IMG/VR virus record: IMGVR_UViG_3300031933_000215
Coordinates: 62,001-126,000 of that record
Direction: 5' to 3' (one strand)
DNA: 64,000 nucleotides
A model generated the notes under the pieces. It did no database searches. It saw nothing but the letters and a program-made list of their open reading frames with translations, and was not told where the DNA came from. The translations under genes were made by a program, and so were the position numbers. Positions 8,716-12,054 of this stretch are shown here, in pieces. The first letter of the stretch is position 1. Every line of letters begins with the position of its first letter.

Positions 8716-9642
8716 TTATTTCAGGGTGTCGATCACGAAGTTCATGTGGAAGTTGCGCATCTGTTCGTGACAGTACCCGCGTGTGCCAAACTGGGGCGAC
8801 CATTCAAAGAAGCCCAAGTCGCCAGTCTTGGTCCGATACAGATCAACCGACCCCAACCTGATGTCGAACAATTCGATCAGCGCTTCGATCTGTTCGACCT
8901 CGGTAGTGGTGAACAGGTCTTTATAGTCCAACAGCTCAGCAGGTGCACCCGACAACGGGGTGTTCAAATCGAGATTGGCTTGCCGGTATTCCTTTTCTTG
9001 AATCCCACGTTCGAGGGCGAGACGTTGGTGACCACCCACCAGCAGGCGATACTCCGCAGTAATGCCTTCAACGTACTCGGTGATCAGGATTTTGTCATGG
9101 GTGAATGGGCCGGATGCGCTATCTGGGTAGCGGTCTGTGAACACAACGTCGGGGAACCGTTCTTTTAGCGAGTCCATGGATTCGTCACAACACACCCTCA
9201 AGAAGTTATCCAACTGATGCGTCGGTACCACTGCTTGGTCACACCCACGAGCGCCGTTCTCGCGCTTCACAACGACCTTTCCTTTTAATGGGTGTCCGAA
9301 CTCAGACACACCCATGGCAAAGTGACCACGGCCTTCTGTGTGGTACAGTGTCGGGGTTTCCATGATCTGTTGATCGGCCATCAGTAGTCGAGTCATCTGC
9401 AACGACTTGGCTTCCCGTGTAAACGGGATATAATACTCACCCATCAACAACTGAGCCCGTTTGTTCACCTTACTGCTGAAATCAAAGTACCAATCGCAGT
9501 TTGCTTCCACCACGTCCCCGTCCTGTTCAATCACTGGGTTTTGGTGAATGACGTATCGGGTTTTCCCGTGGTAAAACGACGGCGGAAGGTAATGGATGTT
9601 GTCCACCCCTTTGTTATTAATGCCGATCACTACCGTTTTCAT
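8716..9642 (-). CDS. ATP-grasp ligase (RimK-like)
   Basis: VVVK..NGARG, ITEYVEG...EYRLLV, GSVDLY, FFEWSPQFG match ATP-grasp motif order; SD AAGGA. Confidence 0.75.
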   Translation of the reverse strand: MKTVVIGINNKGVDNIHYLPPSFYHGKTRYVIHQNPVIEQDGDVVEANCDWYFDFSSKVNKRAQLLMGEYYIPFTREAKSLQMTRLLMADQQIMETPTLYHTEGRGHFAMGVSEFGHPLKGKVVVKRENGARGCDQAVVPTHQLDNFLRVCCDESMDSLKERFPDVVFTDRYPDSASGPFTHDKILITEYVEGITAEYRLLVGGHQRLALERGIQEKEYRQANLDLNTPLSGAPAELLDYKDLFTTTEVEQIEALIELFDIRLGSVDLYRTKTGDLGFFEWSPQFGTRGYCHEQMRNFHMNFVIDTLK

Positions 9643-9669: not shown

Positions 9670-10047
9670 TTAGGTTTGGTTCAAAATGTCCGCCAGGGCC
9701 CGGGCCTGACTGATGGGGGTGGTGGCAAACCGATCCGACAGTAAATAGTCGTGGTCTTTGGTCAAACCTCTGAGTTCGTCAATGAGGTGTGGGTTTTCAT
9801 TTGCCCACTGTTCCCACAGAGCCCGATAGGCAAGGTACAATTCCTCGCCTTGCCAGTTTCCTCTCGGAGGTTTGCCTTTCCCAACGCGCCAGTCGTCCAC
9901 ACCGAGCACACCGTAGCCTTTTACAGTCAACTGGTAATGCTCTTCAATGGAGTATCCATCCGACAACCGAGCGACTAAAGCAGAGAAACGTCGGTCGCCT
10001 CGGGTTGAGAGTTCGTATCCGCCGAACCGGGCCCATCGGACTTTTTT
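9670..10047 (-). CDS. NADAR-like phage domain with no start codon for its N-terminal part; possibly reached by -1 frameshift from the polymerase gene
   Basis: Frame is open upstream of the track's TTG (9966): KKVRWARFGGYELSTRGDRRFSALVARLSDGYSIEEHYQLTVKG; FS...DG..S.E..YQ..K resembles the NADAR N-terminal motif. Confidence 0.55.
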   Translation of the reverse strand, partial: KKVRWARFGGYELSTRGDRRFSALVARLSDGYSIEEHYQLTVKGYGVLGVDDWRVGKGKPPRGNWQGEELYLAYRALWEQWANENPHLIDELRGLTKDHDYLLSDRFATTPISQARALADILNQT

Positions 10048-11921
10048 CCATGACTGGCCACAAAATCGGTGAGCAGTTCGTCCAGGGTTGGGGCACCCAA
10101 GATCTTCTGGCAGATCTCAACGGAGTTAACACGCCCTCCTGTGAGGTTGACGCCGACTTCTCGCCGATGATGCTCAGTGATACCCTCCATGCGAGAAAAC
10201 TCCATCACGCACGTCTCACGGGCGATGTTGAGCAACTGTGACACGTTGGGGTACGTGGATACGATGTCCAGGTCGGCTACGTGGGCAAACACCAACGTTT
10301 TATAGTCGGGGAACTCCTGCACGCACTTCAGACCGGTCGGTCCAGCCATGTACGATGGCAACGTCACGATCCAGTCGTCATGTCCGATAACGTGTTTGTC
10401 CAGCTCGTCCACCGGTTCGTCTGAGCTGGTGCCGATCACACACGCCGGTTCCCGGTTGAGGTACCAGAAGTGCATGTCGTCACACAGTCGTTTTGGGTTG
10501 GAGTTGAAGTTCTTGTAATCTGAGTTCTTGGCAAACATGGAGATGCTAGACGCCAAATCGTTGGTCTTTTCGTCCAACAATTCCAGCGCGATACTATCGA
10601 AGACGTTGTAGATACCGTATTCGATCTTGTATTTCTCCTGCATGACTTCGTGCCAGCGCAGACCTGAGAGATGGGAGGTCGGTTCAAACTTCAGCTTACC
10701 AAAGTCCACCGCCAGCTCCAACGTGTCCCCCACGACGGCCCCGGCAATACCTTCGCGATCCACCCGTTTCTTGTTGATGGTGTATTTGGGGGTACCGCCC
10801 GGGTTGGTGACCAGCTTTTCGTCGCACTCTTCCAGAAACTTAGTGATGTCCTCCGGTGCAGCGACTTTCTTACTGACCTTAAAGCTGAGTTCTTTGTCCA
10901 AGATGAAATCGAGGGCGTACGAGCTGTCCTTCCCGTTCGCTACCCGCAGGTTGCGGTAAACGGGCATGGAATCGATCGCCTGAAAACTGGCCGGGTGGGT
11001 CAGCCAGTTCCAACGGTCCTCAATGTTGATGGACATGGTCTTACCGGAGGCGGTGACTTTCTGAGCCGGACCCCGACGGTAGTAGCAGTATTTGTACTTG
11101 TCCGGTACCCGGGGGTCAGAGAACACCTGAGCGGGATCGATAGCCGCATCTTCCAATGCAGCGATCATGCGCGTGATATCGAAGTCCATGTTCCAGAAGG
11201 TGAAGAACTCCGGTTGCCATTCGTGTAGTCGGTTCAGGATGGTGATGACAATGTCCGATGGGTTATCCACCACCAACACTTCCAACTTGGTGTTCCGTTT
11301 CCGAAGCAGTGGACCGATGTACTGTTCGGCAAGTGCGTGGGTTTTACCGATGGGATCATCAACGTCCCCAATCCACGATTTAAGGTAAACCAGGGTCGCG
11401 TTTTCCTTACATGTGGCGGACATGCAAATGATTTCGCCGTCCTTGGAGTGGACGTTGGTCTCAATATCGCCAGCGGCGACTTTGTTGAAGGTGATCAGAT
11501 CTGGCCACCGCTGACGGTAGTCGGCTTTAAACAAACAACTGCTGGAAACGTCGGCCCCGTAGAGGTACGGACTACGGGCCAGTCGTTTCAGTGGCGGGTT
11601 CGGCCCGGCGGAAAAGTCCCTAAGGGTTTGGGCAATCCGACGCGGCAATTCAATTTGGGTACTGGAGTATTTCTGGCAATTACTGACGTACTCGTAGTCT
11701 TTCTTATCGCGGTGGGTTTGCCGTCCGGGTTGGGTTACCCAGAACGGACGTTCGTAATCTTCCTTCAGTCGCAGGTTCGGAACCTTGCGTCCGTCTTTTA
11801 GGTGGATGATCTCTTTGGCAACCAACAAATCGTGGTTACTACCGTCTTGGGCTTTAACGTAGGTAATGTGCTTTGGTTCGATGCCCAAAACATCTTCTTT
11901 GGAAAACGAGTTGTTAGCCAT
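9975..11921 (-). CDS. split family-B DNA polymerase: 3'-5' exonuclease plus motif-A subunit (phiKZ gp82-like), 648 aa
   Basis: ExoI GDIET, ExoII WNMDFD, ExoIII YNVFD, PolB motif A DLDIVSTYPN; motifs B and C absent; start MANNSF at 11921 with SD AAGGAG. Confidence 0.85.
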   Translation of the reverse strand: MANNSFSKEDVLGIEPKHITYVKAQDGSNHDLLVAKEIIHLKDGRKVPNLRLKEDYERPFWVTQPGRQTHRDKKDYEYVSNCQKYSSTQIELPRRIAQTLRDFSAGPNPPLKRLARSPYLYGADVSSSCLFKADYRQRWPDLITFNKVAAGDIETNVHSKDGEIICMSATCKENATLVYLKSWIGDVDDPIGKTHALAEQYIGPLLRKRNTKLEVLVVDNPSDIVITILNRLHEWQPEFFTFWNMDFDITRMIAALEDAAIDPAQVFSDPRVPDKYKYCYYRRGPAQKVTASGKTMSINIEDRWNWLTHPASFQAIDSMPVYRNLRVANGKDSSYALDFILDKELSFKVSKKVAAPEDITKFLEECDEKLVTNPGGTPKYTINKKRVDREGIAGAVVGDTLELAVDFGKLKFEPTSHLSGLRWHEVMQEKYKIEYGIYNVFDSIALELLDEKTNDLASSISMFAKNSDYKNFNSNPKRLCDDMHFWYLNREPACVIGTSSDEPVDELDKHVIGHDDWIVTLPSYMAGPTGLKCVQEFPDYKTLVFAHVADLDIVSTYPNVSQLLNIARETCVMEFSRMEGITEHHRREVGVNLTGGRVNSVEICQKILGAPTLDELLTDFVASHGKKSDGPGSADTNSQPEATDVSLL

Positions 11922-12054
11922 ACGGTCAATTGCTCCTTTTGGTCTCTGTAGCATTGACAGAACCGGTAGAGTTTCCAACGGCCTAGTTCTGGAGCACGCA
12001 TTATTTCTATGATTGTGCTTAAGCCTCAACGACCCACGAACAAGGAGTATACCC

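What the first reader, a model, noticed from the sequence alone, without database searches (positions are those of the whole stretch)
9670..11921. dnaX-type -1 slippery site could fuse the DNA polymerase subunit to a start-less NADAR-like domain
Seen: 22 codons before its stop, the minus-strand polymerase gene reads CAT GGA AAA AAG TCC, placing A_AAA_AAG (plus-strand CTTTTTT, 10041-10047) in the correct phase. The -1 frame continues KKVRWARFGGYELSTRGDRRFSALVARLSDGYSIEEHYQLTVKG to 9670 and has no ATG/GTG/TTG between its upstream TGA and 9966. Established: A_AAA_AAG is the efficient bacterial -1 signal used by dnaX and IS3-family elements; NADAR enzymes remove ADP-ribose from guanine in DNA (DarT1 antitoxins). 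Inference: the WAR..GYE.S..GD.RFSAL block looks like the real N-terminus of a phage family I recall, and FS...DG..S.E..YQ..K resembles NADAR. Frameshifting would give a 750-aa Pol-NADAR fusion alongside the 648-aa subunit, tethering a DNA-adduct eraser to the replisome. Caveats: no strong 3' stimulator or internal SD is visible, and removing one A gives an ordinary start (ATG GAA AAA GTC, MEKVRWAR), so a homopolymer error or recent mutation is a real alternative.
Basis: partly seen in the sequence, partly recalled or inferred. Interest (0 to 1): 0.8.

Follow-up and report, generated by a model that had tools for sequence, protein, structure and literature searches.

The report
Frameshift site extending a phage polymerase subunit
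A giant phage related to phiKZ almost certainly uses a ribosomal slip at the end of its DNA polymerase gene to add an extra 123-residue accessory domain to some polymerase molecules; the signal is conserved in phiKZ itself and I found no description of it.

Summary
A_AAA_AAG (10047-10041, minus strand) lies in phase near the end of the polymerase gene, and the -1 frame runs open to 9670 with no start codon or Shine-Dalgarno sequence.

The six-A run is not a sequencing error. Two IMG/VR assemblies and contigs from four runs in at least three studies show it without gaps.

The gene is the homologue of phiKZ gp82, the N-terminal subunit (DNAP-N) of a split B-family polymerase.

In a census of 70 distinct polymerase 3' ends:
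- All 17 with the downstream domain in the -1 frame carry an in-phase X_XXA_AAG heptamer (A_AAA_AAG, C_CCA_AAG or G_GGA_AAG). phiKZ is among them; there the domain is annotated only as a fragment.
- None of the 53 others carries one.

Two lineages place the domain in frame behind a single TAG. A distant relative encodes a seamless polymerase-domain fusion. Another fuses the domain to Rhc, the polymerase's RNase H-clamp partner.

The NADAR assignment is not established. Pfam, profile-profile comparison and Foldseek against the PDB all fail. Only weak structural hits and the domain's fusion partners point that way.

Verdict: a conserved -1 frameshift that I found described nowhere. The domain's function is unknown; a role in ADP-ribose processing is possible.

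The parts
9975..11921 (-). Zero-frame gene for the N-terminal subunit (DNAP-N) of a split B-family DNA polymerase; 648 aa, TAG stop at 9977-9975
   Evidence: phrog_3011 'DNA polymerase', E 2e-220. It is 55% identical to phiKZ gp82 over aa 7-624. gp82 is DNAP-N according to bioRxiv 10.64898/2026.09.30.755723. The exonuclease residues D152/E154 and motif A D550 are invariant in alignment A6.
11933..11938 (-). AAGGAG Shine-Dalgarno sequence in front of the polymerase ATG (11921-11919)
   Evidence: Read directly. It shows that genes of this operon have ordinary initiation signals, which the downstream domain lacks.
10041..10047 (-). Slippery heptamer A_AAA_AAG in the polymerase phase (codons G625-K626-K627)
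   Evidence: Homology to phiKZ gp82 ends at H624, one codon before it. The same class of heptamer is present in 17 of 17 relatives with the domain in the -1 frame and in 0 of 53 others.
9670..10041 (-). The -1 frame coding for the accessory domain 'X' (123 aa after the slip, VRWARFGGYE... to TAA 9672-9670); no start codon and no Shine-Dalgarno sequence of its own
   Evidence: phrog_9995, E 1e-43, profile positions 2-121 of 124. 843 representative clusters match at E<=1e-3. All family-invariant residues are kept. AlphaFold2 model with mean pLDDT 97.
9975..10040 (-). Overlap zone: a non-conserved 21-codon zero-frame tail of the polymerase lies over the conserved N-terminal block of X
   Evidence: Against the 86%-identical relative L102 there are 5 differences. 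Four are synonymous in the -1 frame and one in the zero frame. The zero-frame tail lies beyond the polymerase family profile, which ends at aa 627.
10049..10051 (-). ATG in the +1 frame (it comes from CAT GGA); a chance look-alike of a start codon
   Evidence: No Shine-Dalgarno sequence precedes it, and no equivalent ATG exists in the other A_AAA_AAG lineages.
9964..9966 (-). First canonical start (TTG) in the -1 frame; it would give a 98-aa product lacking 10 invariant N-terminal residues
   Evidence: for the ORF, for the invariant residues. No Shine-Dalgarno sequence is visible upstream.
10010..10028 (-). Weak 6-bp hairpin starting 12 nt after the heptamer; not a convincing stimulator
   Evidence: the 80 nt after the site fold at -24.6 kcal/mol, z = +0.38 against shuffles. 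No Rfam match.

Best explanation
What it is. The window comes from a phiKZ-like (chimallivirus-type) jumbo phage. The gene at 11921..9975 encodes DNAP-N. [quoted passage not shown]

How it works. Most ribosomes finish in the zero frame and make the 648-aa subunit. A minority slip back one base on A_AAA_AAG, where both lysine tRNAs re-pair with AAA. Those ribosomes read on in the -1 frame and make a 750-aa DNAP-N-X fusion. X is a compact 123-residue alpha/beta domain of family phrog_9995 and has no initiation signal of its own. The slip therefore sets a fixed, probably low, ratio of polymerase molecules that carry X. Because DNAP-N is a stable part of the polymerase core, X is delivered to the replisome.

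What is shown: the site, the open start-less frame, the conservation of the site together with the -1 arrangement, and natural fusions of X to replisome proteins.

What is inferred: that the slip takes place, and that its efficiency is low.

What is speculative: the function of X. Its partners elsewhere are DUF4326, SLOG domains and giant multi-domain phage proteins, and it weakly resembles NADAR. This suggests an enzyme acting on ADP-ribose derivatives or adducts. A close relative has deleted it, so it is an accessory module.
For: 1. In-phase heptamer with an open -1 frame that has no start and no Shine-Dalgarno sequence. The polymerase gene and the next gene both have AAGGAG/AAGGA plus ATG.
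2. The family profile of X aligns from residue 2, directly after the heptamer. Homology to gp82 stops one codon before the heptamer.
3. Census through X: 26 distinct junctions. All 16 with X in the -1 frame have X_XXA_AAG where that frame is open, and 13 of the 16 lack any canonical start.
4. Independent census through the polymerase: 17 of 17 with X in the -1 frame carry the heptamer. It is absent from all 53 others: 44 without X, 7 with X in the +1 frame, 2 with X in frame.
5. The heptamer changes identity but stays slippery: A_AAA_AAG, C_CCA_AAG, G_GGA_AAG. The C and G types sit 0-3 nt before the stop codon.
6. Two lineages nested in the A_AAA_AAG clade have X in frame behind a single TAG followed by C.
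7. P0344 is a seamless 698-aa DNAP-N-X protein in a contig that carries a phiKZ-type capsid gene.
8. P0274 is X fused to a full-length homologue of Rhc, the RNase H-clamp subunit of the polymerase.
9. Substitutions in the overlap zone are mostly synonymous in the -1 frame.
10. The A6 run is confirmed in independent assemblies.
Against: - There is no direct evidence for a trans-frame protein.
- No stimulatory hairpin, pseudoknot or upstream Shine-Dalgarno-like element is found in the window, so efficiency may be only a few percent.
- Three -1 lineages (PhiPA3, 201phi2-1, Viktualia) also have ATG or GTG at the domain's first codon, so X can probably also be made on its own in some phages.
- Eight junctions have X in the +1 frame with no recognised shift site.
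- No seamless fusion is found among the 120 closest polymerase homologues.
- X is free-standing in many other phages.
Confidence: 0.8

Rival explanations
1. X is made as a free protein by initiation or termination-reinitiation at a non-canonical codon, coupled to translation of the polymerase gene. The heptamer is then incidental.
For: PhiPA3 has TAATG, and 201phi2-1 and Viktualia have GTG, at the first codon of X. phiKZ has the near-cognate ATA there. X is free-standing in many phages.
Against: - In the window and five other A_AAA_AAG lineages there is no ATG, GTG, TTG or near-cognate codon at the N-terminus, and the polymerase stop lies 24-96 nt downstream of the heptamer and of the start of X. 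Ribosomes would have to move backwards and start without a start codon.
- Phabio, L076, L083 and L049 have GTA, ACA or GTT at that codon.
- This rival does not explain why the heptamer occurs in 17 of 17 junctions with X in the -1 frame and in 0 of 53 others.
Confidence: 0.08
2. RNA polymerase slips on the A6 run, so that a fraction of mRNAs carry one A fewer or two more. Standard translation of those mRNAs then fuses the frames.
For: The window has a run of six A. Transcriptional slippage at A or T runs is known in bacteria and in IS elements (established knowledge).
Against: Six A is shorter than the runs that usually slip efficiently. Sister lineages achieve the same arrangement with C_CCA_AAG or G_GGA_AAG, which contain only three A in a row. 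That points to a mechanism at the ribosome, common to all.
Confidence: 0.04
3. Only a truncated 98-aa protein is made, from the TTG at 9966. The upstream -1 frame sequence is not translated.
For: It is the only canonical start in the frame, and gene callers choose it.
Against: The 26 residues upstream hold 10 family-invariant positions (R6, Y10, E11, S13, G16, D17, R19-A22). These are kept intact and evolve synonymously in the -1 frame. No Shine-Dalgarno sequence precedes the TTG. The Atlas model of the truncated form is poor (pLDDT 0.46), against 97 for the full domain.
Confidence: 0.03
4. The junction is a sequencing or assembly error, or a recent one-base insertion that has made X a pseudogene.
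For: Removing one A would create ATG GAA AAA GTC, giving MEKVRWAR.
Against: The junction is identical in two IMG/VR assemblies and in contigs of four runs from at least three studies, one at 95x word depth. X keeps every invariant residue. Relatives show the same start-less -1 arrangement without any nearby ATG.
Confidence: 0.02

Closest known systems
E. coli dnaX tau/gamma programmed -1 frameshift
   Same: The same heptamer, A_AAA_AAG, in a replication gene. The slip of tRNA-Lys from AAG to AAA is the core event. It gives two products from one gene in a fixed ratio.
   Different: dnaX has an upstream Shine-Dalgarno-like element and a strong 3' hairpin, and the slip meets a stop almost at once, giving the shorter gamma. 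Here no stimulators are found, and the slip adds a whole 123-residue domain.
Phage lambda G/GT tail assembly chaperone and IS3-family OrfAB transposase (-1 frameshift fusions)
   Same: A -1 slip near the end of an upstream ORF attaches a downstream domain that has no start of its own. The fusion is the minor product. The arrangement is conserved where the sequence is not.
   Different: The gene context differs: here it is a DNA polymerase subunit. The appended part also exists as a free protein and as a module of giant proteins in other phages.
Retroviral Gag-Pol, where different lineages use a -1 frameshift or stop-codon readthrough
   Same: Related genomes reach the same fusion by different recoding arrangements. 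Here these are a -1 heptamer (17 lineages), an in-frame TAG followed by C (2 lineages) and a seamless fusion (P0344).
   Different: Readthrough of the TAG is inferred, not shown. A third arrangement, with X in the +1 frame, has no recognised signal.
phiKZ split DNA polymerase DNAP-N (gp82) + DNAP-C (gp50) + Rhc (gp155) (bioRxiv 10.64898/2026.09.30.755723)
   Same: The window gene is the gp82 homologue (55% identity). Residues 589-638 of gp82 are part of the palm-insertion domain, so X would hang from that domain.
   Different: The paper expressed the annotated gp82 coding sequence only and does not contain the word frameshift. X is not part of the described complex.
NADAR (PF08719; YbiA, antitoxin of DarT1 systems)
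   Same: A small alpha+beta domain of about five helices with small beta elements. The order of motifs is similar: F-S-x, D-G, S/T-x-E-x-x-x-Q-x-x-x-K, L-x-D/E, and a C-terminal helix. X is fused to DUF4326 and SLOG domains, the partners reported for NADAR and Macro domains (PMC9503650).
   Different: There is no significant sequence, profile or structure match. X is about 40 residues shorter and lacks the invariant D-x-x-W-G and G-x-N-x-L-G motifs of NADAR.

Membership tests
Programmed -1 ribosomal frameshift site (X_XXY_YYZ class) | Slippery heptamer in the zero-frame phase | tested here: met
   A_AAA_AAG at 10047-10041, read as GGA AAA AAG.
Programmed -1 ribosomal frameshift site (X_XXY_YYZ class) | The -1 frame is open across the site and encodes a conserved product with no initiation signal of its own | tested here: met
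   Open from 10116 to 9670, with the first canonical start at 9966. phrog_9995, E 1e-43, aligns from residue 2.
Programmed -1 ribosomal frameshift site (X_XXY_YYZ class) | The site is conserved among relatives and tied to the -1 arrangement | tested here: met
   17 of 17 against 0 of 53. 16 of 16 in the first census. Background frequency 2.8e-4 per codon.
Programmed -1 ribosomal frameshift site (X_XXY_YYZ class) | Stimulatory element: 3' hairpin or pseudoknot, or an upstream Shine-Dalgarno-like sequence as in dnaX | tested here: not met
   The 80 nt after the site fold no better than shuffles (z = +0.38), with only a 6-bp hairpin 12 nt away. No Rfam match. No Shine-Dalgarno-like sequence is visible upstream. 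In the C and G-type lineages the adjacent stop codon could serve, and some have hairpins (z -2.2 to -5.7).
Programmed -1 ribosomal frameshift site (X_XXY_YYZ class) | A trans-frame protein is detected | not testable with these tools
   No proteomic or ribosome-profiling data were available. The sequencing runs found are DNA, kept as contigs.
NADAR (PF08719) | Match to the family HMM | tested here: not met
   No NADAR hit for the window domain or any of 60 family members at E<=1.
NADAR (PF08719) | Profile-profile similarity to bona fide NADAR proteins | tested here: not met
   hhalign of A4 against the NADAR alignment A5 (YbiA plus 7 phage NADARs) gives probability 0.6%, E 0.09. Against YbiA alone it gives probability 0.2%.
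NADAR (PF08719) | Shared fold with NADAR structures | tested here: inconclusive
   Foldseek against the PDB gives no match. Against BFVD, four predicted NADAR proteins appear: three with TM by query 0.55-0.62 and one at 0.30, all with E>1 (1.4-7.6) and probability at or below 0.35.
NADAR (PF08719) | ADP-ribosyl or N-glycosidase activity | not testable with these tools
   This needs a biochemical assay.
phrog_9995 (uncharacterised phage protein family) | Full-length match to the family profile | tested here: met
   E 1.1e-43, residues 2-123 on profile positions 2-121 of 124.
Chimallivirus DNAP-N (phiKZ gp82 family) | Full-length homology to gp82 with the exonuclease and motif A acidic residues | tested here: met
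   55% identity over aa 7-624. D152, E154 and D550 are invariant in A6 and correspond to phiKZ D151, E153 and D562.

The most novel reading that the evidence does not exclude
X is a miniature NADAR-like hydrolase that removes ADP-ribose, or a related adduct, from DNA bases.

Chimalliviruses tether it to their replicative polymerase in several ways: a frameshift, readthrough, or direct fusion to DNAP-N or to the Rhc clamp subunit. A fixed fraction of replisomes would then carry their own lesion eraser into the phage nucleus, as a built-in counter to DarT-type defence.
Probability: 0.2. Interest if true: 0.85.

Novelty: new member of a known kind. Interest (0 to 1): 0.68.

Why it matters
phiKZ and its relatives are the model nucleus-forming phages, and the structure of their polymerase has only just been described.

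- If the frameshift is real, the current gene lists of phiKZ, Noxifer, Phabio, Psa21, Viktualia and many metagenomic relatives miss or truncate a conserved protein domain.
- A fraction of the polymerase core would carry an extra, probably enzymatic, module.
- That would give a testable link between replication and a domain otherwise found in phage conflict proteins.
- It would also be a clear natural case in which related viruses reach the same fusion by a -1 slip, an in-frame stop or a direct fusion.

Tried and rejected
- Near-identity DNA search against GenBank phages found nothing. Relatives were reached through protein searches instead.
- Homopolymer error is rejected.
- A dnaX-like RNA stimulator was looked for. 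Folding of the 80 nt after the site in 12 lineages gave no common structure, because the heptamer sits 0-12 codons from the conserved start of X and nothing can be positionally conserved. Rfam was negative.
- No phage tRNA gene lies in the window.
- Function of X: Pfam, NCBIfam and PADLOC were all negative. The PDB profile search gave only chance hits. Two ESM Atlas searches were uninformative.
- The NADAR comparison needed an alignment built from YbiA and phage NADARs. It came out not significant.
- A search for seamless fusions among the 120 closest polymerase homologues found none; the longest is 727 aa. The one seamless fusion came from the profile search with X.
I removed those rows and did not send them elsewhere.
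- My first scripts overshot the polymerase stop wherever tblastn ran through it. This was corrected.
- I considered a link between X and the 'little finger' insert of DNAP-N. I dropped it because several polymerases that carry X appear, from match lengths, to lack that insert. This was not examined properly.
Full report
**1. The observation.**
On the minus strand the 648-aa ORF 11921..9975 reads CAT GGA AAA AAG TCC. This puts A_AAA_AAG (10047-10041) in phase, with 21 more codons and a TAG behind it. The -1 frame reads K-K-V-R-W-A-R-F-G-G-Y-E... and is open to the TAA at 9672-9670. Its first ATG/GTG/TTG after the upstream TGA is the TTG at 9966. A slip gives 627 + 123 = 750 residues.

**2. Not a sequencing error.**
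- Two IMG/VR contigs from different metagenomes are identical at the junction.
- Logan contigs of four runs from at least three studies cover 9870-10159 with no gap and no other letter. The samples are gas well, subsurface, oil facility (95x word depth) and marine. Some of these may be the source sample.
- The oil-facility strain is distinct. It has 11 differences in polymerase exon 1 and an intron that the window lacks, yet its junction is identical.

**3. What the genes are.**
- The window belongs to a phiKZ-like jumbo phage. The ORF matches phrog_3011 'DNA polymerase' (E 2e-220) and is 55% identical to phiKZ gp82 over residues 7-624.
[quoted passage not shown] It forms a 1:1 core with gp50 (DNAP-C) and binds the RNase H-clamp protein Rhc (gp155). 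gp82 residues 589-638 are part of a palm-insertion domain (bioRxiv 10.64898/2026.09.30.755723). That paper does not contain the word frameshift.
- Homology between the window protein and gp82 stops at H624, one codon before the heptamer.
- The -1 frame product, called X here, matches phrog_9995 (unknown function) at E 1e-43, from its residue 2 to its end. The family N-terminus therefore starts directly after the heptamer.
- X has no Pfam, NCBIfam or PADLOC match.
- The polymerase gene has AAGGAG and an ATG. The next gene (9642..8716) has AAGGA and an ATG. X has neither.

**4. Comparative test.**
- First look at annotated relatives:
  - Noxifer has GCA AAA AAG in the polymerase phase, X in the -1 frame and no start. 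Its annotation begins at an internal TTG.
  - phiKZ ends its polymerase with AAC CCA AAG TAA, which contains the heptamer C_CCA_AAG. X follows in the -1 frame with ATA where PhiPA3 has ATG. RefSeq annotates only a 39-codon fragment, PHIKZ082.1.
- Census through X (phage records plus IMG/VR): 26 distinct junctions between the polymerase gene and X.
  - All 16 with X in the -1 frame have an in-phase X_XXA_AAG heptamer where the -1 frame is open: 7 A_AAA_AAG, 8 C_CCA_AAG and 1 G_GGA_AAG.
  - 13 of the 16 have no canonical start codon.
  - The C and G types lie 0-3 nt before the polymerase stop, the classic 'shifty stop' layout.
- Second census, sampled through the polymerase and so independent of X: 70 distinct 3' ends.
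  - X absent: 44, none with such a heptamer in the last 40 codons.
  - X in the -1 frame: 17, all with it.
  - X in the +1 frame: 7, none.
  - X in frame behind a TAG: 2, none.
- The background frequency of in-phase X_XXA_AAG in long ORFs of these loci is 2.8e-4 per codon.
- The ATG that makes the 'one A fewer' reading possible exists only in the window lineage. The heptamer is present in all of them.

**5. Other routes to the same fusion.**
- In a tree of X, the A_AAA_AAG lineages form one supported clade. It contains two lineages (L016/L017 and L020) in which X is in frame with the polymerase behind a single TAG followed by C. L016 is sister to the window lineage (support 95/85). Their polymerase exons contain no other in-frame TAG, so the code is standard.
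- A profile search with X found 843 representative clusters. Two are informative:
  - P0344 is a 698-aa protein whose residues 16-536 are a distant DNAP-N (23% identity, E 2e-41) and whose residues 558-678 are X with all invariant residues. Its contig has a phiKZ-type major capsid gene next to it.
  - P0274 is X followed by an RNase H domain and a C-terminal part. Together these align over 98-99% of their length with the approximately 449-aa 'ribonuclease H' of phiKZ-group phages, that is Rhc.
- X is thus fused, in separate lineages, to two different subunits of the same polymerase machine.

**6. Selection in the overlap.**
Against the relative L102 (polymerase 86% identical) the stretch from the heptamer to the polymerase stop has five differences. 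Four are synonymous in the -1 frame and one in the zero frame. The polymerase as a whole shows 227 synonymous and 85 non-synonymous codon differences. The numbers are small, but they agree with the -1 frame being the frame under selection right after the heptamer.

L102 has since lost the rest of X and the following gene. X is therefore dispensable, an accessory module.

**7. What argues against.**
- No stimulator is found in the window. The 80 nt after the site fold no better than shuffles (z +0.38), and Rfam is negative. A bare A_AAA_AAG gives only low-level shifting in E. coli (established knowledge), so I expect the fusion to be a minor product.
- PhiPA3, 201phi2-1 and Viktualia have ATG or GTG at the first codon of X as well as the heptamer. 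A free X may be made there too.
- The first residue of X is usually hydrophobic (I, V, L, M or T). NTG codons at that place may therefore be coding accidents rather than starts.
- Eight junctions (the Psa21 and D6 group, plus L040) have X in the +1 frame. All share GAA AAG AAG. Only four have TTG or GTG at codon 1; the rest have CTG, ACG or CGG. I cannot say whether these initiate or shift.
- No seamless fusion exists among the 120 closest polymerase homologues. This fits a need for both forms, but it is not proof.

**8. What X is.**
- AlphaFold2 with 60 sequences gives a confident model: pLDDT 97, with helices at 33-41, 66-83, 85-96 and 113-123 plus short strands.
- Foldseek against the PDB finds nothing. 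Against BFVD it finds X's own family, then four weak NADAR hits (three with TM 0.55-0.62, one 0.30, all E>1) and weak DUF4326 hits (TM 0.30-0.34, E>0.5).
- hhalign of the X alignment against a NADAR alignment built here gives probability 0.6%.
- By eye the order of motifs and of secondary-structure elements resembles NADAR, but X lacks NADAR's invariant D-x-x-W-G and G-x-N-x-L-G.
- Context:
  - X occurs in two-domain DUF4326-X proteins and in a DUF4326-X-SLOG (YAcAr) protein.
  - It also occurs next to a cpYpsA SLOG domain, and inside giant proteins of 2,000-6,000 residues.
  - X is also an early-region gene in N4-like Achromobacter phages.
- My reading: X is probably an enzyme of the ADP-ribose-processing network and possibly a very divergent NADAR relative. 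Membership is not shown.

**9. Known or new.**
Full-text searches found no description of this frameshift. The terms covered phiKZ or Chimalliviridae with frameshift, jumbo phage with ribosomal frameshifting and DNA polymerase, gp82, and PHIKZ082.1. The library does not cover most subscription journals. The mechanism is a known kind. The gene context and the several routes to the same fusion are new.

**10. Verdict.**
- The frameshift interpretation is well supported (about 0.8).
- The NADAR label is unproven (about 0.3 for superfamily membership).
- The error and pseudogene alternative is rejected.

Noticed in passing
window 10367-10369 (polymerase codon 518); L184:4554-5956, L185: Strains in two other samples (SRR25046491, DRR873022) carry a 1403-nt insertion here. 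It is a group I intron (RF00028, 75.8 bits) that holds a 366-aa HNH_3 homing endonuclease gene. The window strain has no intron. Gene callers split the polymerase into pieces of 523 and 124 aa.
   Followed up: yes
L002:2417-2765 (PhiPA3); L016 about 1800-2170: Other relatives have an intron-like interruption of the polymerase gene exactly at motif A (..HVADLD | IVSTYPNVSQ..). This is a different site from the one above.
   Followed up: partly
L102:1880-2015: A relative whose polymerase is 86% identical keeps the heptamer and the first 28 codons of X. It has lost the rest of X and the next gene, and a GC-rich hairpin follows the deletion point. X and the ATP-grasp gene therefore behave as a dispensable cassette.
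   Followed up: partly
window 8716-9642 (minus strand): The 308-aa gene directly after X has no Pfam, PHROG, NCBIfam or PADLOC hit. In the ESM Atlas it is a RimK-like ATP-grasp protein (feature score 0.97, TM 0.65-0.69). It has its own AAGGA and ATG.
   Followed up: partly
L010, L012, L040, L048, L061, L078, L082, L088 (junction about 2480-2520): In the Psa21 and D6 group X lies in the +1 frame relative to the polymerase. All eight share GAA AAG AAG just upstream. Codon 1 of X is TTG or GTG in four, CTG in two, ACG in one and CGG in one. Whether X is made here by initiation or by a -2/+1 shift on GA_AAA_G is unresolved.
   Followed up: partly
L016/L017:2489-2500; L020:2495-2500: Two lineages have X in the same frame as the polymerase, separated by a single TAG followed by C. 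There is no start codon and no heptamer. This suggests stop-codon readthrough or a suppressor tRNA.
   Followed up: partly
L008:2747-2863 (phiKZ); L001:3064 (Noxifer); L010, L011, L013: Public annotations of X are fragments or begin at internal starts: PHIKZ082.1 is 39 codons, Noxifer gp082 starts at an internal TTG, and Viktualia has three small ORFs. Automatic gene callers cannot see the start-less N-terminus.
   Followed up: yes
P0274 / L187:5001-6812: In another phage contig X is fused to the N-terminus of a full-length homologue of Rhc, the RNase H-clamp subunit of the phiKZ polymerase.
   Followed up: partly
L032, L039, L051, L056, L072, L081 (whole loci); P0275, P0360 and others: X is also an internal module of very large proteins, up to 6,146 aa. 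In one of them DUF7831 is the only other domain recognised. These look like the 'polyvalent' conflict proteins of phages and conjugative elements.
   Followed up: partly
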